A stretch of DNA of 64,000 bases, taken from positions 124,001-188,000 of the IMG/VR virus record IMGVR_UViG_3300030419_004471; one strand, 5' to 3'. Of this stretch, positions 874-11,983 are shown in pieces. Under the pieces are notes generated by a model, which searched no databases, was not told where the DNA came from, and saw nothing but the letters and a program-made list of their open reading frames with translations. A program made the translations under genes and the position numbers. Within the stretch, counting starts at the first letter, position 1. Every line of letters begins with the position of its first letter.

Positions 874-1479
874 TTAAGTTATATCTTTTGATTCAATTAA
901 TGTATAAGAAAAAGAATTACCCCAAATACCAGCACCCTTTTTAACTATTTCCATAAAAGAATTAAAATCAGATTCCTTAGAAAATACTTGACAACCAGCT
1001 GACCATTTATCTACTTGTGTAGAACCATTAACTCTTGAACCTGCTTTATGTATATTAATACCAAATATACCTTCGTGTATATTGGATTCTAACAAATCAT
1101 AATTGTCATCTCTATTATTATCTCTATAAACCTTTATTGGTTTAGCTTGTCTTAGTGCTTCATATTTATTTTGATGCAGTCCAATCTTATGTGAACCTCT
1201 ATATTGACCTGGTTTTACAATTGCAACTCCAGCATTACTCATTATATTTTCTGTCCAATAAGAACCAGGGTCTGTTGTACAATCCCAACAATGAAAATTC
1301 CATTTACCATTTAAATCTTTATATGATAAAGTCATTTTATCATCAAACCTATTAGTAACTTTTCCATGCGTTGCTGAATTTCTAACTCCTACGATATTTA
1401 CATCGTATCCTTTGTTACCAGTGAACCACTTATAACCTTTTGATTGAACTGCTTTTTGTATTTGTTGTATTGTGTACAT
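874..1479 (-). CDS. L,D-transpeptidase/YkuD-like peptidoglycan enzyme, candidate endolysin
   Basis: GINIH...WSAGCQV (HxxxxS-x-GC catalytic motif) and TTDPG. Confidence 0.65.
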   Translation of the reverse strand: MYTIQQIQKAVQSKGYKWFTGNKGYDVNIVGVRNSATHGKVTNRFDDKMTLSYKDLNGKWNFHCWDCTTDPGSYWTENIMSNAGVAIVKPGQYRGSHKIGLHQNKYEALRQAKPIKVYRDNNRDDNYDLLESNIHEGIFGINIHKAGSRVNGSTQVDKWSAGCQVFSKESDFNSFMEIVKKGAGIWGNSFSYTLIESKDIT

Positions 1480-1500: not shown

Positions 1501-2058
1501 TTAATTTAGTAAATATCCATAAGGAGTTGCTGATATATCTTGTCCTATTGGATAGTATTCCAATTTCATTGATACAGTCATAGTTCTTTGAATGTATGGA
1601 TTAAAGAATTCTCCAGCAGCTTCTAAAGAAATTAAACCACTATGAGATTGACCTGCATCATAAACAATGACTTCATTCCAAACAATATATTCTTGGTCAC
1701 CTGGTATTTCTACTCCAGCATATTTGTTATCTGGATTTTCCCAAGTGTATGTACCAAGATCTAATAGTTCTCCATCATCGTTTGCATCTGAATCTAAACA
1801 ATACAATGCAAAGTGTTGTCTATCTAATCTTGGGTCACCTTCATCTATTTGAAGATACAGAATAAATATCTTTTTAAGTTTTTGGTCTACCCATTTTTCT
1901 CCAGCAAATGTAGTGATAACTGAATATCTTTCACTTGGGTCAAATGTTTCACCATCTAAAGTCATTTCGAATTTAGGTAGAAGTATCTCTTCTTCTTCCT
2001 TTTTACAACTGACAGTTAGTAGTACAATTCCTAATAATATCAATAATAATTTTTTCAT
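1501..2058 (-). CDS. lipoprotein, hypothetical
   Basis: MKKLLLILLGIVLLTVSC lipobox followed by KKEEEE, resembling a Bacteroidota lipoprotein export signal. Confidence 0.7.
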   Translation of the reverse strand: MKKLLLILLGIVLLTVSCKKEEEEILLPKFEMTLDGETFDPSERYSVITTFAGEKWVDQKLKKIFILYLQIDEGDPRLDRQHFALYCLDSDANDDGELLDLGTYTWENPDNKYAGVEIPGDQEYIVWNEVIVYDAGQSHSGLISLEAAGEFFNPYIQRTMTVSMKLEYYPIGQDISATPYGYLLN

Positions 2059-3631: not shown

Positions 3632-4684
3632 TTAGTTATTTATGCCACCTCTTGAAGAACCTCCAGAACTTCCTCCACTTGATACTCCACCGCTTGAACC
3701 TCGTGATGAACCTCCACTACTAACACCACTTGAACTTCCTCTACTAAAATTATTTGAACTTCCTCTACTGAAAGAATTAGAAGAGTTATTGATATTTGGA
3801 ATGGATGGTCTGGAGTTAATAGTGTTATTCCAATTATTAACTGGTCTACTATTATTGTTATTATTGTTAATAGGAACTACTGGTCTACCATTATTATATC
3901 TAATAACATTATTATTAGGTACATTATTTGGATTATTATAAACTCTAACATCATTAAACCTATCTCTTAATCTATCAACAATATTATCAATAACATTATT
4001 ATTATTGTTATTATTGTTATTTACATTATTTCTTGGTTTGTTATATCTTGTACTGATTAGGTTTTCTATATTACTATTACCATTATCTATAAATCTACTT
4101 CCTCTTCCTCCTCTAACATATGCAATATTTGTATTTTCTCTACTAGAATTCCAAATTACATTGTACCCTGGATTACCCCAAGGCCCATTGTACCAATTGT
4201 TCCATGGTCTGTAAGGTCTGTGCCAATTCCAAGCCCATCCATAATTCCAATTGTTCCATCCCCAATTATTATATCCCCATCCATAATTAAAGAATGGATA
4301 GTTAAATGCCCAATCATTCCAAAATTGATATCTATTCCAATAAACATCAAATGCTGTATATGGTCTCCAATAGCTAAAACTGTAGTTAGATGTGTACCAA
4401 CTATAAGGTTGGTCCATAGCATATTGTGCAAAATCCCATCTGAATCTTGAATCTGTTCTTAGTTTCCATCTTAATTGAGAATAAGATAAGGTATCTATTT
4501 TTACATCACTTGGTACTTCTAATGCTACTTCATGCGGCCCATATAATGGGTCGTGATACATAGTTGATAATTTAAATGATGCACATCCTGTAAATAAATT
4601 TAGTATAATCAATCCAGCTATTACACCAAGTACCTTAGCTATTGCATCAGCGTAACGTGTTGATTTTTTCTCTGATTGTGTCAT
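3632..4684 (-). CDS. lipoprotein with W/Y/N/G-rich and N/S/G-rich low-complexity tail
   Basis: LFTGC lipobox; GWGYNNWGWNNW segment; poly-N runs; RGSS repeats. Confidence 0.7.
   Translation of the reverse strand: MTQSEKKSTRYADAIAKVLGVIAGLIILNLFTGCASFKLSTMYHDPLYGPHEVALEVPSDVKIDTLSYSQLRWKLRTDSRFRWDFAQYAMDQPYSWYTSNYSFSYWRPYTAFDVYWNRYQFWNDWAFNYPFFNYGWGYNNWGWNNWNYGWAWNWHRPYRPWNNWYNGPWGNPGYNVIWNSSRENTNIAYVRGGRGSRFIDNGNSNIENLISTRYNKPRNNVNNNNNNNNNVIDNIVDRLRDRFNDVRVYNNPNNVPNNNVIRYNNGRPVVPINNNNNNSRPVNNWNNTINSRPSIPNINNSSNSFSRGSSNNFSRGSSSGVSSGGSSRGSSGGVSSGGSSGGSSRGGINN
3730..3769. repeat. 16-bp direct repeat ttgaacttcctctact (encodes SRGSS)
   Basis: Copies at 3730-3745 and 3754-3769. Confidence 0.75.
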
Positions 4685-4922
4685 TTAGTACCTCCTTTTC
4701 CAATTCGTTAATTCTATTTAAAATTTTTGAAATATCTTCACGAGTAGTTTTTATTGTACTCCTAATCTCTTTCCATTCTTTAATAGTATTTGTTGTATCT
4801 TTATCTATTTCTGATAAACTTACACTTTTCGTAGTATCGTTATTTGTTTGATTCTCTTCTTTAATAACATCACTACAGGACAATCCTAACATTGTTAGTA
4901 GTCCCAGTAAAAAACATTTCAT
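4647..4922 (-). CDS. small coiled-coil lipoprotein (possible o-spanin-like)
   Basis: LGLSC lipobox; heptad-rich C-terminus. Confidence 0.5.
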   Translation of the reverse strand: MKCFLLGLLTMLGLSCSDVIKEENQTNNDTTKSVSLSEIDKDTTNTIKEWKEIRSTIKTTREDISKILNRINELEKEVLNDTIREKINTLR

Positions 4923-4954: not shown

Positions 4955-5485
4955 TTAGTGTTTTATGTGTTGTACTCTCCACTTTACATCCTTATTTCGT
5001 AGCATTCTTTTAGTAACATCTACATTCTTTTTAGAATCATCTGCGAAGTAAACATCATCATAGCCCTCATTATCAATCTTATCTTCAATCCAATCAGCTT
5101 TATCCTTTGGATTATTAGATGCTAATGCGGTTACATAAATCTTACTCATATTAATACCAATATCTTTGAGGTATTGTCTAATTGGTTTGTATGCAGCTCG
5201 TGCGGTTAGAATGTAAACTCCATCACCTCCACTACTACTAACAATTCTTCGTAGAACCGAAGTTATCTTTTTTATCTCGTTTGGATTCTGAACCTTTTCA
5301 AAATCTTTAAAATCAAATTCATCACCTGGTTTCTCTTTGTACACTGCGTATTGACCTGGTGTTAGTTTTCTTGTCTTACCTTTATTGGTAACATAAATAT
5401 ATGATGTGGTCTTTACCAGAGTATCATCAAAATCAAATACTCTGAGTTTTTTTGATTCCACAAATAAACTTCTTAATAATACCAT
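4955..5485 (-). CDS. HAD-superfamily phosphatase
   Basis: VFDFDDTL motif I, ILTAR motif II, K, YFADD motif IV. Confidence 0.8.
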   Translation of the reverse strand: MVLLRSLFVESKKLRVFDFDDTLVKTTSYIYVTNKGKTRKLTPGQYAVYKEKPGDEFDFKDFEKVQNPNEIKKITSVLRRIVSSSGGDGVYILTARAAYKPIRQYLKDIGINMSKIYVTALASNNPKDKADWIEDKIDNEGYDDVYFADDSKKNVDVTKRMLRNKDVKWRVQHIKH

Positions 5486-5499: not shown

Positions 5500-5889
5500 T
5501 TACATAAATAGTTTGTAATTCTTTTCTTCGTTAACTGCTTCTATTTCATATGGATGAGTAGTATAATCATGTCCATATTTATCATAATATCTTTTAAACC
5601 AAGTAGGTGATTGTAAGTAGTGAACGTATTCGTGGATAAGAGTTTGAATAATCATTTTTCTACTTTTCATCTGAGGATAGTAAACACTAATCTCATTCAA
5701 CATTGAACAATACTCAGCGTGACATTTATCTTCTTCACCTTGAGCACCATCTTCACCACTATATTTTTCGTAGATGTTTTTGTGAAGTTCTATATAAGGA
5801 GTACATTCTTGGAATTTAGAGAACCCATAGTGCTTCTCAATCTTAGGATAAACTTCATCGATGATTTTTAACACTTTATCTTTAGTCAT
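5500..5889 (-). CDS. zincin (HExxH) metallopeptidase-like protein
   Basis: TLIHEYVHYLQ...HPYEIEA. Confidence 0.75.
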   Translation of the reverse strand: MTKDKVLKIIDEVYPKIEKHYGFSKFQECTPYIELHKNIYEKYSGEDGAQGEEDKCHAEYCSMLNEISVYYPQMKSRKMIIQTLIHEYVHYLQSPTWFKRYYDKYGHDYTTHPYEIEAVNEEKNYKLFM

Positions 5890-6856: not shown

Positions 6857-7264
6857 TTAAAATTGTCCTGCTTTCTTAACATCTTCTATTGCTTCTTGTA
6901 ACTCATCTAATGTAACAGGACATTCTAAATCTAATCCTGCTTTAAAACTTTCTTCGTTGATACCATCTTTAAAAATTATTAAAGTTGGTGCCATTCGAAT
7001 TCTATATTCTTTTTTAGCCTTTGGAGCTTTAGCTATATCAACTCTGTAATACTTAACTCCATCTATCTTATCCCAATCAGCGAATGCATTTGCTTCATTA
7101 AATTTAGCCCAAAACTCTACAACTACTATATTTGCCTCATCATCTCCAAACGCTTCCTTATGGTTTATCTTATCTTCAAAATTTGAATCATCAATAAATT
7201 CTTGGCCGAAACTATTAAATCCGCAAACTAAAGATAAGATAAATATGAATAAAAATTTTCTCAT
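6857..7264 (-). CDS. secreted thioredoxin-fold protein lacking CxxC
   Basis: Signal peptide; VVVEFWAKFN where WxxWCxxC is expected; cis-Pro loop MAPTLIIFKDG. Confidence 0.7.
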   Translation of the reverse strand: MRKFLFIFILSLVCGFNSFGQEFIDDSNFEDKINHKEAFGDDEANIVVVEFWAKFNEANAFADWDKIDGVKYYRVDIAKAPKAKKEYRIRMAPTLIIFKDGINEESFKAGLDLECPVTLDELQEAIEDVKKAGQF

Positions 7265-7274
7265 ATTTGTCCTA

Positions 7275-7607
7275 TCAGTTATTTTTTTGTATTTCATATA
7301 AACGCTCATCGATTTTATCTAACTTTTCCTTAATCTCATCAACATCATCTTGAGTGTCCATAATAGTTTGGCGAATCAGCTCATCCTTCATATCAAACTC
7401 CATTCTTTCGATAACAGGTGTTGGTAACTCTTTCGCCTCTTGAATGTCAGCTTGTAGGGAATACCACATACCAATTAATGTAGCTAGTCCTACAACTACC
7501 ATTCCTATAGTTTTTAAACTTATCGAGAAATCAGATTTTCCATCCCCATCAATATCAATTCCCATTGATGTATCTTCACCTAATTCTCTAGTACCTTTTC
7601 TTGCCAT
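7275..7607 (-). CDS. single-TM coiled-coil protein
   Basis: TM IGMVVVGLATLIGMWY; C-terminal heptads; DIDGDGKSD Ca-loop-like motif. Confidence 0.65.
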   Translation of the reverse strand: MARKGTRELGEDTSMGIDIDGDGKSDFSISLKTIGMVVVGLATLIGMWYSLQADIQEAKELPTPVIERMEFDMKDELIRQTIMDTQDDVDEIKEKLDKIDERLYEIQKNN

Positions 7608-7627
7608 AATCTTCTTTCTTTAGTCTA

Positions 7628-8857
7628 TTATCTAAATGTATAGTTTATTCCAAATGTTGAATTAAAGAATTTAGTATCCCACATTTTATTGTATTCACCT
7701 TCAGCAAAAACTCCTAAATTCTTACCTATTTTCCAACCAAAGTTGATACCAAATTGATAATCTTCCCATTGTTCACCTTCTGCATCTTGTACCAATCCAC
7801 CTTTACCCCAATTGTTTCTGTTTAAGTAAGAGAAATCTTCATCTCCTTTAACATATTTGTGATATCCTGGTAGATAGTTTGCGTATCCGTGAAACCAAAA
7901 GTTATTCTTATAATGATAGAAATCAGCTCCTAAGATTGGTGATACAACACCGAATGGGTCTATACTATCCCAAATTTCATTATTATATCTGTTAATAAGG
8001 TCTCTGAATACTGTGTTTCTAAAATCTAAATCTGAATGTGCTACGATATTTCCTTGTTCATCTCTCCAAATCCAATCAAATCTTTCATTACCAGTTTCTA
8101 AATCAGTATAAGTTGTTGCGTGGTCTGTGTATCCATACTCGTATCCTAAAGAGTACCAAGGATTAGCTGGATATTCTTCCCCATCAATTATTTGAATTTC
8201 ATTTAACCAAATTTCAATCGGGTTATATCCATATGCTCTAGTGTGAGTTCTATATATTGCTCCAGCTGATAAACTAAATTTCTTACCAATTGGTAATCTA
8301 GCTCTTACTTCTGCTGATTTATATTCGAAATCAAATGCACCTTGGCTTCTTGATTCTAACTTAACAATATGATTTTTACCTGTGTGTCTAATAAAATACC
8401 TAAAGTTATTCCATTCTTCACCTCTAAGTCTTTCCTTTTCAAAGTGAAATAAATATTCAAATCCTTGAACTGCTGATGTTGGTGCGGATAATGCTTGTTG
8501 ACTTTCTCTGTATTGATTACCTGTCCAGAAGTTACCTGGTTTTCTTTCGTATTGAAATCTTCCTAGTTTACGGATACCTATTCCATATCTGTAATCAAAT
8601 GGATAATATTCTGTTACTTCTATAACTCTTGGTATAGCGTACAAATCTCCATCAGCTGGTCTTTCTACAAAGAAATCTTTTCTTGAGTTTTCATATGCAT
8701 TTCTGATATCACCGGCTGCATAAATTGTTCCGTATTTTAAGAAGTCATTATAGAACTCTTTAAATATATTCTTTTTTACTTTCGTTTCTTCTATTTCTTG
8801 GGCATTAACATTAAATGAAAGTAATAAACTTAACATTAATAATAGTAAATTTCTCAT
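7628..8857 (-). CDS. outer-membrane beta-barrel protein
   Basis: Signal peptide; alternating amphipathic strands; C-terminal FGINYTFR beta-signal. Confidence 0.7.
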   Translation of the reverse strand: MRNLLLLMLSLLLSFNVNAQEIEETKVKKNIFKEFYNDFLKYGTIYAAGDIRNAYENSRKDFFVERPADGDLYAIPRVIEVTEYYPFDYRYGIGIRKLGRFQYERKPGNFWTGNQYRESQQALSAPTSAVQGFEYLFHFEKERLRGEEWNNFRYFIRHTGKNHIVKLESRSQGAFDFEYKSAEVRARLPIGKKFSLSAGAIYRTHTRAYGYNPIEIWLNEIQIIDGEEYPANPWYSLGYEYGYTDHATTYTDLETGNERFDWIWRDEQGNIVAHSDLDFRNTVFRDLINRYNNEIWDSIDPFGVVSPILGADFYHYKNNFWFHGYANYLPGYHKYVKGDEDFSYLNRNNWGKGGLVQDAEGEQWEDYQFGINFGWKIGKNLGVFAEGEYNKMWDTKFFNSTFGINYTFR

Positions 8858-8891
8858 TTTTTCTCCCTAATTTTATAAGGTTATATTTGTA

Positions 8892-8899
8892 TATAAGTA
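8892..8899 (-). promoter_or_regulatory. putative late promoter variant TACTTATA
   Basis: + strand tataagta upstream of 8857. Confidence 0.5.
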
Positions 8900-8920
8900 T
8901 TAAAAAATAACCAAATCGTG

Positions 8921-9583
8921 CTATATTTTGTTTTCTATATCACTTTTTATGTATTGAAATAACTTTTTACCTATCTTTTCTCCAAAATCCTTATCAGAGG
9001 AATAATGTGCTCTAGCTATAAGTCTACTTTTTGATATATCCTTACCTGCGTTGATAAATTCATTTCGTAATCTACCTTTATCGTATTTTTCTGCTAAATA
9101 TAATCCTATTAATGTACCCTGAACTGCATGTCCTGAGGGATACGATGGTGTTTTCATAGAGGAAAGTATTACCTCTGCTAACTTCATATTATATTCTTGT
9201 GCTAATTTGCCTGGTCTTGGTCTATTAAAGTGATATTTTAGGTCTAAAATAATACCAGCTGAATCATCCATTAACTTTTCCACCATTTCTTTTGGAAACT
9301 CAACTCCATTTTTTTTACAAACTTTTTCAAAAACATCATCAATTTCATCATTTTCTACAACAAAGTTTTTATCTTCAGGTAATTTTTGTAAGGTTTTTAA
9401 TTCATTATATGTTTGTAGTGATTCATTTTTTGGTGGATGAGCATCTTTAAATTCTGAATAATCTAAATCACTAAATAGTCCATTTTTAACCTTATCTATC
9501 TTTTTTTGATGTTTAGGCTTGATGGAATCTGAATGCTTTAGATTCTTAATTGATACTATGTTTTCAAATGTATATACAAACAT
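8921..9583 (-). CDS. PAP2/haloperoxidase-fold acid phosphatase
   Basis: K..FNRPRP, PSYPSGH, SR...AHY.SD motifs. Confidence 0.85.
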   Translation of the reverse strand: MFVYTFENIVSIKNLKHSDSIKPKHQKKIDKVKNGLFSDLDYSEFKDAHPPKNESLQTYNELKTLQKLPEDKNFVVENDEIDDVFEKVCKKNGVEFPKEMVEKLMDDSAGIILDLKYHFNRPRPGKLAQEYNMKLAEVILSSMKTPSYPSGHAVQGTLIGLYLAEKYDKGRLRNEFINAGKDISKSRLIARAHYSSDKDFGEKIGKKLFQYIKSDIENKI

Positions 9584-9802: not shown

Positions 9803-10690
9803 TTATTTCCATAATCCCATTTCGGAATTACATCCTGCTTCTGCTATTTTTTTAAATTCTTCTCTTCTATCTATGCCAGGTACAAAATCTGTAAGATGTT
9901 TGTTATTTCTGTATTTATAGTTTTCACAAACTACTAAATTTTTTATTTTGAATTGAATTCCTTCTTTGTGATGTTCACACCACCACATTATATATGTATC
10001 TTCTAAACCATAGTGTCCAAATGATTCAGGAACAGTCACCTTATCTAATAGTTCTTTAGATAAACAAGTAAACCAACCACCAGCAAATTTCATTCTTGGT
10101 TGTCCTATCACATTATTATTTACTGTTTCTATTCCAATGTTTCCATTCTTAATCCCACAATCTACAAATGGGTCATTTGTTTTTTGATAACCTAATGGTT
10201 CATTTAGGTATTGTTCATTTACTAAACAATCCCAAGTTGAATCCCATATACGAACTATTTCAGGAGTAACCACCGATAGTGGATACTTATCTTTTATAGA
10301 TTTAATAGAACTATCAATATAAGCAAGAGTTCTTTCATCGAATATGATATCTGTATCTAACCAAATATGATAATCTACATCTTTGTGAGTTTTCCAAGTT
10401 TTTCTTCTTTTCGATACACAACCCAAAACTTCTGATTTATCTTCAACTCTAAAGTATTTGTTAGTAATCCAATCTGATTGTTTTCTAAGTTTATCAAACT
10501 TACCAAAAAAGTACTCCATAGGAATTTTACTATTTTCCCATAACGTTAATTCACCAGTTAATGCTAATGTTATATCTAAAATAAAATCTTTTTCATCGAT
10601 ATAACGAAATGCTTTTTGTAGTTGAATTAATGTTAATTCTAAATCATCTATCTCGTGTGGTAAACAAAATATGGAAATACAATACTTCAT
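9803..10690 (-). CDS. GT-A fold glycosyltransferase
   Basis: WLDTD DxD motif, GGWF, YGLED. Confidence 0.7.
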   Translation of the reverse strand: MKYCISIFCLPHEIDDLELTLIQLQKAFRYIDEKDFILDITLALTGELTLWENSKIPMEYFFGKFDKLRKQSDWITNKYFRVEDKSEVLGCVSKRRKTWKTHKDVDYHIWLDTDIIFDERTLAYIDSSIKSIKDKYPLSVVTPEIVRIWDSTWDCLVNEQYLNEPLGYQKTNDPFVDCGIKNGNIGIETVNNNVIGQPRMKFAGGWFTCLSKELLDKVTVPESFGHYGLEDTYIMWWCEHHKEGIQFKIKNLVVCENYKYRNNKHLTDFVPGIDRREEFKKIAEAGCNSEMGLWK

Positions 10691-11085
10691 TATGCGTTAT
10701 AATCTACTTTAGTCCATTTATCATCTGAATCCATTCTGAAAGAACCTACATAAACTTGATTCCATTCATCAGGTGCTATTAGAGATAAGAATAGAGTTTC
10801 ATCTTTTTGTTGGTATAAATGATAAGTATGTCCTTTAATTGGTTCAAATCTAAACTCACTATTATATACTAACTTGTTCCACTCATATGCTTCTAATAAC
10901 TTTCTATACTCTTCTTTTATCTCTTCATAACGTGCTTCGAAGTAATGATTTGTCTTAATTAAGTTCTTTTGTTTGTATGAAGATATATCTGTTGTTCTAA
11001 TAGCTGGTGCTCCGACGTGGTCTCCATAAGGCATTATCGCCTTATTCTCTGCAAACATATCTGGTTTCTTTTTCTTTTTAGCCAT
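10690..11085 (-). CDS. DUF2452 family protein
   Basis: PYG..VGAPAI, FEPIKGHTYHLY, LSLIAPDEW. Confidence 0.75.
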   Translation of the reverse strand: MAKKKKKPDMFAENKAIMPYGDHVGAPAIRTTDISSYKQKNLIKTNHYFEARYEEIKEEYRKLLEAYEWNKLVYNSEFRFEPIKGHTYHLYQQKDETLFLSLIAPDEWNQVYVGSFRMDSDDKWTKVDYNA

Positions 11086-11311
11086 TACATTCACCATTAA
11101 CTATACAAGAATTATCCCAACCATCCTTCTGTGCATAACAAGAGTTCATATAAGTTGTTCCATCTGGTGCACATACTGGTTCATATATCTCTATACATAC
11201 AGCTCCTTTTGTATATTCTCCCTTAACACAAGTATCATCCTCTTCTTGACAAGATGTTAATAAAAACATTAGAAGCATAGAAGTCCAAAATGTTATTAAT
11301 ATATTTCTCAT
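11078..11311 (-). CDS. Kazal-type protease-inhibitor lipoprotein
   Basis: LTSC lipobox; CIEIYEPVCAPDGTTYMNSC Kazal signature; terminal GEC. Confidence 0.8.
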   Translation of the reverse strand: MRNILITFWTSMLLMFLLTSCQEEDDTCVKGEYTKGAVCIEIYEPVCAPDGTTYMNSCYAQKDGWDNSCIVNGECNG

Positions 11312-11787
11312 ACAACTACAACTAATTTTTTAGCTCCTTCAAATCCATACTTTAAACTATAAGTAAAAAGAAAATCACCAATTATTGTATTAACAAAAAA
11401 TGGTAATGCTAATACATAGCAACTTATTAATCCTTCTACTGTATGTGGGTATCCTAATAAGAAAACTCCAAAATTTGTAATTAAAAAGAACAATAATGAA
11501 CTACTAAATATTACTTTATTTGAAATTCTTTTAGAATTCATACCAATTAAAGATATTAACATAAATGATAAATAAACAAATATCGATATACTACTAAATC
11601 CTAAAAATAAATCAGATAGCCCCATACATAATAAAGGTAGTCCAAATGCTAACCATTTATTATCAAATCGGTTTCCACCAAATAAAGCTATTGCTGTTAT
11701 TGGAGCAACGTTAGGTGGGTGTGGTAATAATCTTGCTAATAATGCCAATACTATTAATAATAATACAACTTTATTTTTACTTATCAT
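11308..11787 (-). CDS. DUF6580-like membrane protein (ECF S-component-like)
   Basis: RLLPHPPNVAPITAIALF; FFLITNFG; multiple TM helices. Confidence 0.7.
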   Translation of the reverse strand: MISKNKVVLLLIVLALLARLLPHPPNVAPITAIALFGGNRFDNKWLAFGLPLLCMGLSDLFLGFSSISIFVYLSFMLISLIGMNSKRISNKVIFSSSLLFFLITNFGVFLLGYPHTVEGLISCYVLALPFFVNTIIGDFLFTYSLKYGFEGAKKLVVVV

Positions 11788-11983
11788 TGTTTTTCTTTTC
11801 TAATTTTATCCAAAATCTTTCAAATCCAAAATAACTTAATGTTTTAATTAGAGTATCTATTCCACCAATAGCTAAACCAAATTTCCAATTACCACTAACA
11901 AACCAACCTGATAATATAGTGATTGAGGTTGCTATACATCTCCAAATAATTGTTTTCGCTATTGTACTCCTATAACTTGTCAA
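11777..11983 (-). CDS. DUF2061 membrane protein
   Basis: STIAKTIIWR...K...YF.FERFW. Confidence 0.75.
   Translation of the reverse strand: MTSYRSTIAKTIIWRCIATSITILSGWFVSGNWKFGLAIGGIDTLIKTLSYFGFERFWIKLEKKNNDK

What the first reader, a model, noticed from the sequence alone, without database searches (positions are those of the whole stretch)
6857..8899. Three-gene envelope cassette: OM beta-barrel, TM coiled-coil, and redox-dead secreted thioredoxin
Seen: under one late motif, a 409-aa beta-barrel with a large acidic/aromatic insertion, an inner-membrane anchor with coiled coil and DxDGDG loop, and a signal-peptide Trx fold whose CxxC is replaced (WAKFN). Inference: a trans-envelope complex (channel, linker and periplasmic adaptor) of unknown function, such as nutrient uptake, superinfection exclusion, or export of the phage glycan. 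I do not recognise a described system with this composition.
Basis: inference. Interest (0 to 1): 0.62.

Follow-up and report, generated by a model that had tools for sequence, protein, structure and literature searches.

The report
Conserved phage envelope trio beside lysis genes
Three neighbouring phage genes (an outer-membrane barrel, a small inner-membrane coiled-coil protein and a secreted, catalytically dead thioredoxin) stay together across very distant marine phages and in many relatives lie next to the cell-bursting genes, so they may be an undescribed way to break the outer membrane at lysis.

Summary
Window 6857-8857 (- strand) encodes three proteins. One is a 409-aa signal-peptide protein that models as a 12-14-strand outer-membrane beta-barrel with a 96-aa acidic/aromatic loop. 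One is a 110-aa type II membrane protein with a short coiled coil. One is a secreted thioredoxin-fold protein with no CxxC; its true start is about 7264, not 7309.

In 108 related loci (38 barrel groups), every locus with enough flank keeps all three genes, down to 28-33% barrel identity, while other neighbours change. The tm110 gene is directly followed by the Trx-like gene in 97 of 103 cases, and the pair can lie before, after or on both sides of the barrel.

New here: in many relatives the trio abuts an endolysin and a holin. Three unrelated candidate endolysin types fill the slot: Peptidase_M15_3, Amidase_2 and a 201-aa family. Two complete 61-69 kb genomes show no lipoprotein o-spanin candidate.

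My best reading (about 0.4) is a lysis-cassette envelope module that does the spanin job with different parts. Host signals point to Bacteroidota. Binding is untested, and the complex prediction gave no verdict. In this window the candidate endolysin lies 5.4 kb away and no holin was found.

The parts
8892..8900 (-). Copy of the enriched upstream motif ATAYTTATA (here ATACTTATA), 35 nt before the barrel start codon. A GGGAG ribosome-binding site lies at about 8863-8868.
   Evidence: 20 copies against 9.0 +/- 2.8 expected; 17 on the gene strand, mostly just upstream of starts; sequence. Timing ('late') is not tested.
7628..8857 (-). Outer-membrane beta-barrel protein, 409 aa. Signal peptide ends ..NVNA/QE. 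About 12 (possibly 14) strands. Long conserved turn at 98-131, probably periplasmic (RKLxRFxYE motif). 96-aa acidic/aromatic insertion at 206-301, probably extracellular. C-terminus GINYTFR.
   Evidence: No Pfam, PHROG or NCBIfam family. The family has 2,320 word-search hits and 247 representatives at 50% identity. Atlas clusters are Viruses 98-100%.
7275..7607 (-). tm110: type II (N-in) single-pass membrane protein, 110 aa. Its 58-aa C-terminal tail is helix, Pro kink (ELPxP), then a coiled-coil helix. It has no cysteine. A lineage-specific DIDGDGKSD insert lies before the membrane segment.
   Evidence: Weak phrog_1009 match of unknown function. By a crude regex it is the only (G002), or one of two (G007; also G000 once the ORF seen is counted), type II plus charged-tail ORFs in three genomes. 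Topology is inferred, not measured.
6857..7264 (-). Secreted thioredoxin-fold protein without catalytic cysteines, 135 aa. Signal peptide ends ..SFG/QE. The active-site position reads WAKFN. The cis-Pro loop (RMAPT) and the KAGLDL loop are conserved.
   Evidence: The listed ORF runs to 7309, but homologues start at the Met at 7264.
1501..2058 (-). Facultative fourth member: a lipoprotein (lipobox LTVSC followed by KKEEEE, which matches the Bacteroidota surface-export signal K-(D/E)2). It models as a small soluble 8-stranded beta-barrel. In relatives it lies between the barrel and tm110 or directly after the Trx-like gene.
   Evidence: Export signal from PMC5080379. Absent from 12 of 12 near-complete related genomes searched, so it is not obligatory.
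874..1479 (-). 201-aa candidate endolysin (H...SAGCQV motif reminiscent of YkuD-type enzymes, my reading). In L056 (record G007) its homologue sits exactly between the Trx-like gene and a phrog_3427 holin.
   Evidence: phrog_3000 E 2e-36; phrog_33083 'endolysin' E 9e-12. (gene order). (44-48% identical homologues, most of them in Bacteroides and crAss-like phages). No Pfam or PDB sequence match, so the enzymatic assignment is tentative.

Best explanation
The three genes form a conserved envelope module of a large group of uncultured marine phages that most likely infect Bacteroidota.

The barrel is inserted in the outer membrane. tm110 is anchored in the inner membrane with its coiled-coil tail in the periplasm. 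The Trx-like protein is a soluble periplasmic adaptor that keeps the thioredoxin peptide-binding groove but cannot do redox chemistry.

I propose that the module belongs to the phage's lysis machinery and carries out the last step, the breaching of the outer membrane. In this view it is a functional equivalent of a spanin. tm110 plays the i-spanin part. The outer-membrane part is a beta-barrel rather than a small lipoprotein. The Trx-like protein links the two, possibly by clamping the barrel's long conserved periplasmic turn.

Shown:
- the three folds or topologies (models and sequence features);
- the deep co-conservation of the three genes;
- the invariant tm110-then-Trx gene order;
- the adjacency to endolysin and holin in many relatives.

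Inferred:
- that the three proteins touch;
- their orientation in the envelope;
- the role in lysis;
- any membrane-disrupting mechanism.
For: 1. CO-CONSERVATION. In 108 loci (38 barrel groups at 80% identity), tm110 lies within 4 kb in 93 of 93 loci with enough flank (34 of 34 groups) and the Trx-like gene in 92 of 92 (34 of 34). In the first set of 91 loci (34 groups), the next most common neighbour family reached only 16 groups. The trio persists at 33% barrel identity (L090) and at 28% (L086 and L098-L112).

2. PAIR BEHAVIOUR. tm110 is directly followed by the Trx-like gene in 97 of 103 cases. The pair lies downstream of the barrel (most loci), upstream (L084, L097) or duplicated on both sides (L029 type).

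3. LYSIS CONTEXT.
- L084: tm110, trx, barrel, M15 endolysin (phrog_894, E 1e-28), holin (phrog_3427, E 2e-23).
- L029: ..trx, Amidase_2 endolysin (phrog_822, E 4e-57), holin (E 2e-15).
- L056 (record G007, a complete 60.9-kb genome with terminal repeats): barrel, tm110, trx, 201-aa candidate endolysin, holin.
- L096: M15, barrel, tm110, trx.
An M15 or Amidase_2 gene lies within 4 kb in 52 of 83 loci (14 of 30 groups). Three unrelated candidate wall hydrolases in the same slot is the pattern expected of a lysis cassette.

4. NO CANONICAL SPANIN SEEN. Complete genomes G002 and G007 show no lipobox ORF by a crude screen. tm110 is the only (G002) or one of two (G007) type II charged-tail ORFs.

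5. I-SPANIN-LIKE ANATOMY. tm110 has an N-terminal membrane segment, then two periplasmic helices with a short linker, only one of them coiled-coil. PMC6139136 describes the T4 i-spanin PseT.3 the same way.

6. A KNOWN GAP. 91 of 677 phages of Gram-negative hosts had no identifiable spanin (PMC6139136), so alternative outer-membrane solutions are expected.
Against: - No interaction is shown; the complex prediction scored 0.00, which is no verdict.
- In the window's own genome the trio is not next to a recognised endolysin or holin. The 201-aa candidate lies 5.4 kb away, and Peptidase_M15_3, Peptidase_M15_4, Amidase_2, Phage_lysozyme and the phrog_3427 holin were not found.
- Only 16 of 30 groups with enough flank show a recognised lysis gene within 4 kb.
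- Related loci share ancestry, so the adjacency counts are not independent events.
- A conserved 96-aa surface insertion and a conserved charged lumen are not what a pure membrane-fusion device needs. They suggest a binding or channel activity.
- tm110's tail (58 aa, at most about 9 nm as a single helix, my estimate) is short for spanning a periplasm.
- Accessory genes also sit beside lysis genes, for example lambda bor (from my knowledge).
- The lipobox and type II screens were simple regular expressions and missed at least one ORF.
Confidence: 0.4

Rival explanations
1. Surface remodelling for superinfection exclusion or receptor masking. The barrel, sometimes with the surface-exported lipoprotein, sits on the infected cell and blocks or decoys the phage's receptor. 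This would protect the infected cell from further infection, or protect progeny from sticking to debris. tm110 and the Trx-like protein would only help assembly or anchoring.
For: - A large conserved acidic/aromatic insertion, predicted to face outward.
- A lipoprotein with a Bacteroidota surface-export signal is linked to the module in 12 of 30 groups.
Against: - This reading gives no role to an obligatory inner-membrane coiled-coil protein and a periplasmic Trx-like protein, which are as conserved as the barrel.
- The module sits in endolysin/holin neighbourhoods rather than among early genes.
- In T4 the exclusion genes act early (from my knowledge).
- The lipoprotein is absent from 12 of 12 near-complete relatives searched.
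Confidence: 0.2
2. Lysis-timing control, comparable to T4 lysis inhibition. tm110 and the secreted Trx-like protein would act like holin T and antiholin RI, a membrane protein with a periplasmic domain and a periplasmic partner that tune the holin. The barrel would be the outer-membrane sensor or entry point for the signal.
For: - The tm110/Trx pair is invariant, adjacent and duplicated as a unit.
- A separate holin gene lies 0-1 kb away in several lineages.
- A periplasmic protein with a binding groove but no catalysis suits a regulator.
Against: - No sequence relation to T4 T, RI or RIII was seen in any family scan.
- The barrel's role is ad hoc.
- Lysis inhibition is dispensable in the laboratory (from my knowledge), whereas this trio is kept in every locus examined.
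Confidence: 0.15
3. Dedicated export and display system for the linked lipoprotein (Slam-like). The barrel would flip the lipoprotein to the cell surface and the Trx-like protein would chaperone it through the periplasm.
For: - The lipoprotein sits between the barrel and tm110 in several lineages and throughout the divergent clade.
- It carries the K-(D/E)2 surface signal.
- Its model is a small 8-stranded barrel with weak likeness (Z 4-7) to surface lipoprotein domains among many others.
Against: - The lipoprotein is absent from 12 of 12 near-complete genomes that keep the trio.
- No Pfam match to the Slam family or to any other family.
- The structural matches are in the range the tool itself calls common.
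Confidence: 0.1
4. Auxiliary solute channel: a phage-made porin that raises uptake of a nutrient during infection.
For: - The barrel's best Foldseek matches are small specific porins (NanC, probability 1.0 but TM only 0.27/0.46), and KdgM scores Z 10.3.
- Many conserved Arg, Lys, Glu and His residues fall on the polar face of the strands (the facing is my reading of alternation, not measured).
Against: - A porin needs no inner-membrane or periplasmic partner.
- The context is lysis genes, not transport or metabolism.
- The fold matches do not discriminate among outer-membrane barrels.
Confidence: 0.07
5. Outer-membrane export channel for a phage-made glycan.
For: - In the window and its closest relatives, glycosyltransferase, sugar-nucleotide and sulfotransferase genes lie just upstream.
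- Polysaccharide secretion barrels (PgaA, BcsC) appear among the structural matches at Z about 9.
Against: - Those neighbours are missing from most related loci, including complete 60-77 kb genomes.
- The structural matches are generic.
Confidence: 0.03

Closest known systems
Two-component spanins (lambda Rz/Rz1, T4 PseT.3/PseT.2)
   Same: There is an inner-membrane type II protein with a helical, partly coiled-coil periplasmic tail. There is also a separate outer-membrane component. In many relatives the genes lie beside endolysin and holin.
   Different: The outer-membrane part is a 400-aa beta-barrel, not a short lipoprotein. A third, soluble Trx-fold protein is obligatory. tm110 has no cysteine. 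There is no sequence similarity to known spanin families in PHROGs or Pfam. Function is untested.
Phage-encoded beta-barrel outer-membrane proteins (lambda Lom; the 1,603 found in huge phages, preprint 10.64898/2026.10.24.761521)
   Same: A phage gene for a signal-peptide beta-barrel in a large phage genome (213.6 kb).
   Different: That survey's main text does not mention a thioredoxin partner, spanins or endolysins. This family also occurs in complete 60-77 kb genomes and always with two fixed partners.
Thioredoxin family (PF00085)
   Same: Sequence match above the Pfam cut-off, with the cis-Pro loop and the Gly loop of the binding groove kept.
   Different: No CxxC in any of 81 homologues. 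It is secreted by a signal peptide. It therefore cannot be an oxidoreductase and more likely binds a peptide.
Small specific porins KdgM/NanC, and Omp85-type barrels (TamA, FhaC)
   Same: Best structural matches to the barrel: Z 10.3 for KdgM, 11.7 for TamA, and Foldseek probability 1.0 for NanC.
   Different: Sequence identity is 3-11%, TM-scores are low (0.27/0.46), and many unrelated barrels score alike. The large insertion and the long periplasmic turn have no counterpart in them.
T4 lysis-inhibition pair (holin T and antiholin RI)
   Same: A membrane protein with a periplasmic domain paired with a secreted periplasmic protein, in a T4-like genome (PolB, RNR and gp41-type helicase). This comparison rests on my knowledge of T4.
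   Different: No homology was detected. A separate holin is present in relatives. T4 has no barrel partner.

Membership tests
Two-component spanin | i-spanin: type II inner-membrane protein with an N-terminal membrane segment and a helical (often coiled-coil) periplasmic domain | tested here: met
   tm110 has one membrane segment at about 33-52 and a 58-aa charged helical tail with heptad spacing. The definition is from PMC6139136. The topology is predicted only.
Two-component spanin | o-spanin: small outer-membrane lipoprotein with a lipobox, encoded inside, overlapping or next to the i-spanin gene | tested here: not met
   The gene after tm110 is a signal-peptidase-I type Trx-like protein (97 of 103 cases). 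A crude screen found no lipobox ORF at all in complete genomes G002 and G007. The linked lipoprotein is 185-204 aa, carries a surface-export signal, and is absent from 12 of 12 near-complete relatives.
Two-component spanin | Location in the lysis cassette with holin and endolysin | tested here: inconclusive
   Met in L084, L029, L056, L096, L102 and many M15-bearing loci. Not met in the window's own genome, where no holin was found and the candidate endolysin is 5.4 kb away.
Two-component spanin | Required for outer-membrane disruption at lysis (spherical-cell arrest when absent) | not testable with these tools
   No cultured phage carries the trio. There was no match in 50,697 phage records, and the closest cultured phage by PolB (Mel-JY01) had no match to the barrel or tm110.
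Thioredoxin (PF00085) | Thioredoxin fold by sequence profile | tested here: met
   E 5.8e-7, 29.9 bits against a cut-off of 23.5. Precomputed PF00085 on all 120 listed homologues.
Thioredoxin (PF00085) | Catalytic CxxC motif | tested here: not met
   The position reads W/Y-A-K/E-F/W-N. There is no CxxC in any of 81 distinct homologues.
Outer-membrane beta-barrel proteins (generic) | Signal peptide, closed antiparallel barrel, and an aromatic-rich C-terminal strand | tested here: met
   Signal peptide and model. Z 9-12 to many solved barrels. The C-terminus GINYTF(R/K) or GINYLIF is conserved. Membrane location is not measured.
Any curated outer-membrane protein family (Pfam, NCBIfam, PHROGs) | Profile match above threshold | tested here: not met
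   No family at E <= 0.1 and no PDB sequence match at E <= 10.
Bacteroidota Sec/SPI substrates (Q-rule) | Glutamine at +1 after the signal-peptide cleavage site | tested here: met
   A Q follows the hydrophobic region in 92 of 93 barrels and 79 of 81 Trx-like proteins, and Q21 is nearly invariant in A2. The rule is from PMC5837995. The cleavage site is predicted, not measured.

The most novel reading that the evidence does not exclude
This is a third, previously unrecognised class of phage outer-membrane disruption machinery, after spanins and the cationic-peptide disruptin. It is used by abundant marine Bacteroidota phages that lack lipoprotein spanins. It would be a three-protein bridge in which an inner-membrane coiled coil and a redox-dead thioredoxin engage a phage-made beta-barrel to open or tear the outer membrane once the wall is degraded.
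Probability: 0.3. Interest if true: 0.85.

Novelty: new variant of a known kind. Interest (0 to 1): 0.68.

Why it matters
How phages without spanins get through the outer membrane is an open question. 91 of 677 phages of Gram-negative hosts had no identifiable spanin (PMC6139136), and one alternative found so far is a cationic peptide (bioRxiv 10.1101/515445).

This trio gives a concrete candidate for a whole group of uncultured marine phages. The barrel family has 2,320 database hits and the Trx-like family 3,842. The stretch occurs nearly unchanged in about 20 marine metagenome runs from 10 studies.

If it works in lysis, it would show that the outer-membrane step can be built from a beta-barrel and a dead thioredoxin. 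It would also change how lysis cassettes are annotated in Bacteroidota phages. If it is instead a surface-remodelling device, it is still the first phage outer-membrane protein I know of with fixed inner-membrane and periplasmic partners.

Tried and rejected
- COMPLEX PREDICTION (barrel 20-409, tm110 30-110, Trx-like 21-135; partner Trx-like): score 0.00 in both runs, controls not run. This is no verdict and is used neither for nor against binding.
- CULTURED PHAGES: no DNA or protein match for the region, the barrel or the Trx-like protein. tm110 gave only a chance-level hit at E 0.8. The closest cultured phage by PolB (Microcystis phage Mel-JY01, 53%) has neither barrel nor tm110 by profile search, with the tool's caveat that an empty answer proves little.
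The single-protein scan found only four contigs in two MAGs, probably mis-binned phage DNA.
- TWO CONTIG LOOK-UPS were wasted on wrong start codons.
- ENDOLYSIN AND HOLIN IN THE WINDOW'S GENOME: Peptidase_M15_3, Phage_lysozyme, Amidase_2 and Peptidase_M15_4 were not found. No homologue of the phrog_3427 holin or the 2-TM family was found by tblastn or HMM.
- EXPRESSION: no RNA run holds the stretch.
- GIANT ~1,970-aa NEIGHBOUR: no Pfam family, and only one weak PHROG exonuclease match on one variant.
- DIVERGENT CLADE: genes between the trio and the holin gave no lysis annotation.
- LOOSE BACTEROIDOTA PROMOTER REGEX (TTG-N17-21-TAnnTTTG): not enriched genome-wide (17 on the gene strand against 13.7 +/- 3.8). 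Only a longer, specific motif recurs.
- LIPOPROTEIN FOLD SEARCH: only generic small-barrel matches, Z <= 7.
- REJECTED IDEA: that the DxDGDG stretch is a conserved periplasmic calcium loop. It is a lineage-specific insert on the N-terminal side of the membrane segment.
Full report
WHERE THE WINDOW LIES

The window is bases 124001-188000 of a 213.6-kb IMG/VR virus record with 30% G+C. It carries T4-type replication genes: family B polymerase, ribonucleotide reductase and a DnaB/gp41-type helicase. Among the ORFs of 150 aa or more, only one short overlapping ORF lies on the + strand; all the others lie on the - strand. The closest cultured phage by polymerase is Microcystis phage Mel-JY01 at 53% identity, and the next are cyanophages at 34%.

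THE OBSERVATION

The three ORFs exist as described.

- Barrel (7628-8857). It has no match in Pfam, PHROGs, NCBIfam or PDB sequences. With a 30-sequence alignment (A1) AlphaFold2 gives a model of mean pLDDT 77.6. The model has about twelve long strands, a long low-confidence turn at 98-131, and an inserted region at 206-301. Structure searches return only outer-membrane barrels: Foldseek finds NanC, OmpT, FapF and others, and VIA-align gives Z 9-12 for TamA, Omp33, FhaC, KdgM and OmpG. No single family stands out. The insertion has 19 acidic, 6 basic and 17 aromatic residues in 96.
- tm110 (7275-7607). It has one membrane segment and a 58-aa charged helical tail with coiled-coil spacing. Its DIDGDGKSD stretch lies before the membrane segment and is present in only 3 of 16 aligned homologues.
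- Trx-like gene. It matches Pfam Thioredoxin above the cut-off. It has a signal peptide, reads WAKFN where CxxC should be, and keeps the cis-proline. None of 81 distinct homologues has a CxxC. Its start is at 7264, not 7309.
- Upstream motif. The motif upstream of the barrel belongs to an enriched family: ATAYTTATA occurs 20 times against 9.0 +/- 2.8 expected. The two genes after the trio also lack a copy of their own. The 'late' label is untested.

I collected 80 viral loci with the barrel, further contigs for distant representatives, a divergent clade and four MAG contigs. ORFs were clustered and then labelled uniformly with HMMs built from those clusters.

- Of 108 loci with a full barrel (38 groups at 80% identity), every locus with at least 2.5 kb on both sides has tm110 (93 of 93; 34 of 34 groups) and the Trx-like gene (92 of 92; 34 of 34) within 4 kb.
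- In the first set of 91 loci (34 groups), the next most frequent neighbour family reached only 16 groups, at variable position and strand.
- The window's own flanking genes (PAP2 phosphatase, p100, p205, p295) are missing from most loci.
- The trio survives at 33% barrel identity with the same order (L090) and at 28% (L086 and L098-L112).
- tm110 is directly followed by the Trx-like gene in 97 of 103 cases.
- The pair lies after the barrel, before it (L084, L097), or on both sides as a duplicated unit (L029 type).

This is strong evidence for one functional module, with tm110 and the Trx-like protein as a tight pair.

THE NEW LEAD: LYSIS GENES

A 150-166-aa family lying 0-1.9 kb after the trio in 47 of 69 loci with room is Peptidase_M15_3 / phrog_894 'endolysin'. 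Gene orders:

- L084: tm110, trx, barrel, M15, holin (phrog_3427, E 2e-23).
- L029: tm110, trx, barrel, tm110, trx, Amidase_2 endolysin (phrog_822, E 4e-57), holin (E 2e-15).
- L056 (record G007; 60.9 kb, terminal repeats, rated complete): barrel, tm110, trx, a 201-aa protein, holin.
- L096: M15, barrel, tm110, trx.
- L102 (divergent clade): barrel, lipoprotein, 145 aa, tm110-like, trx-like, 129 aa, holin.

Three unrelated candidate wall hydrolases thus occupy the same slot between the trio and the same holin family. The 201-aa family is the window's ORF 874-1479 (phrog_33083 'endolysin', E 9e-12). It has 44-48% identical homologues, most of them in Bacteroides and crAss-like phages. Overall, an M15 or Amidase_2 gene lies within 4 kb in 52 of 83 loci (14 of 30 groups), and any recognised lysis gene in 57 of 83 (16 of 30).

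The trio is also not confined to large phages. Twelve related records of about 61-116 kb, most of them 61-77 kb, are rated at least 90% complete. In two complete genomes that I read in full, a simple screen found no lipobox ORF. tm110 was the only (G002) or one of two (G007) type II charged-tail ORFs.

WHAT WEAKENS THE LYSIS READING

- In the window's genome the trio is separated from the lipoprotein and the 201-aa gene by about 4.8 kb of other genes. In the close relative L010 the lipoprotein directly follows the trio, and in L002 one small gene intervenes.
- No holin or standard endolysin was found in this genome.
- The loci are related, so the counts are not independent.
- My regex screens are crude and missed a second type II ORF in G000.
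- The barrel's conserved surface insertion and charged lumen suggest a binding or channel activity that a simple fusion device would not need.
- The complex prediction gave no verdict.

A FACULTATIVE FOURTH GENE

A 185-204-aa lipoprotein (window 1501-2058) lies between the barrel and tm110, or right after the Trx-like gene, in 12 of 30 groups and throughout the divergent clade. After its lipobox cysteine it carries K-(D/E)2. This is the Bacteroidota surface-export signal of Lauber et al. (PMC5080379). It models as a small 8-stranded soluble barrel (pLDDT 83.9) with only generic matches. It is absent from 12 of 12 near-complete relatives searched, so it is an accessory and not a core part.

HOST

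Four independent signals point to Bacteroidota.

1. Glutamine follows the signal-peptide hydrophobic region in 92 of 93 barrels and 79 of 81 Trx-like proteins. This is the Bacteroidetes Q-rule (PMC5837995).
2. The lipoprotein carries the surface-export signal.
3. A recurring promoter-like motif, TTGG..N..TTTTCGTATATTTGTA, has a last element that fits TAnnTTTG. The consensus is from my knowledge, and the loose form of the pattern is not enriched.
4. The 201-aa protein's relatives are mostly in Bacteroides phages, and one trio contig was binned with a Bacteroidetes MAG.

None of these is proof.

COMPARISON WITH WHAT IS KNOWN

Phage-encoded beta-barrel outer-membrane proteins are known. A 2026 preprint counts 1,603 of them in huge phages and suggests receptor interference, but its main text does not mention thioredoxin, spanins or endolysins.

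Spanins are known as an inner-membrane protein plus an outer-membrane lipoprotein, or as a single chain. 91 of 677 phages of Gram-negative hosts had none identifiable (PMC6139136), and a cationic peptide is one alternative. tm110 meets the i-spanin definition. The o-spanin definition is not met. I therefore do not file the trio as a spanin. I propose that it does the same job with different parts. I found no paper describing this composition.

VERDICT

- The most likely role is in lysis (confidence about 0.4 for a spanin-equivalent). Surface remodelling, lysis-timing control and lipoprotein display remain live rivals.

Noticed in passing
window 7628-8857 and 6857-7264; alignments A1 and A2: Nearly every signal peptide in both families is followed by glutamine (92 of 93 and 79 of 81). 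This is the Bacteroidetes Q-rule and gives a host-phylum signal for an uncultured phage group.
   Followed up: yes
window 874-1479 (-): A 201-aa protein with an H...SAGCQV motif. It hits phrog_33083 'endolysin' and phrog_3000. It has 44-48% identical homologues, most of them in Bacteroides and crAss-like phages. In L056 it sits between the Trx-like gene and a holin. It is a candidate for an unannotated endolysin family.
   Followed up: partly
L022:57-5948, L007:41-5965 and 47 further loci: A giant protein of about 1,970 aa with no Pfam or PHROG family lies immediately upstream of the barrel in 49 loci. It takes up nearly 6 kb of complete genomes of about 68 kb. Its residues 1125-1292 are homologous to the window's small HAD/PNK-like ORF at 4955-5485.
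   Followed up: partly
related records G002-G018 (loci L022, L027, L035, L039, L056 and others): The trio occurs in genomes rated complete at about 61-77 kb as well as in this 213.6-kb T4-like genome. The cassette is therefore shared across quite different phage types.
   Followed up: partly
L086:8271-8648, L098:8964-9632, L102:8470-9048: In the divergent clade the tm110 homologue is 139-222 aa, with an extra N-terminal (presumably cytoplasmic) domain of unknown family.
   Followed up: no
window 11078-11311 (-): A 77-aa lipoprotein (LTSC followed by QEEDD) with a Kazal-type protease-inhibitor domain (Pfam E 2e-5). This is unusual for a phage.
   Followed up: no
window 3632-4684 (-) and 4647-4922 (-): Two further lipobox proteins. 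One is a 350-aa Asn/Trp/Gly-Ser-rich low-complexity protein. The other is an overlapping 91-aa lipoprotein with a helical, coiled-coil-like tail. Neither is conserved with the trio.
   Followed up: no
window upstream regions near gene starts at 5889, 26880, 37974, 45972 and 54170: A long conserved promoter-like motif, (C)CTTGGAT..TTC..N..TTTTCGTATATTTGTA, recurs before several genes and again elsewhere in the genome. Its last element fits the Bacteroidota TAnnTTTG element.
   Followed up: partly
L093-L095 (contigs PBPJ01000057, PBPJ01000028, PBPJ01000041): A MAG labelled Candidatus Woesearchaeota (RS366, Red Sea) holds three different copies of the barrel locus. It is probably a low-GC bin that collected several phage contigs.
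   Followed up: no
window 8921-9583 (-): A PAP2-family phosphatase without an obvious signal peptide lies upstream of the barrel here. In L002 it lies downstream of the trio, so it moves independently of the trio.
   Followed up: partly
window 10690-11983 (-): A run of small conserved genes of unknown function lies just upstream of the region: DUF2452, DUF6580 (a membrane protein, E 2e-43) and DUF2061 (a membrane protein).
   Followed up: no
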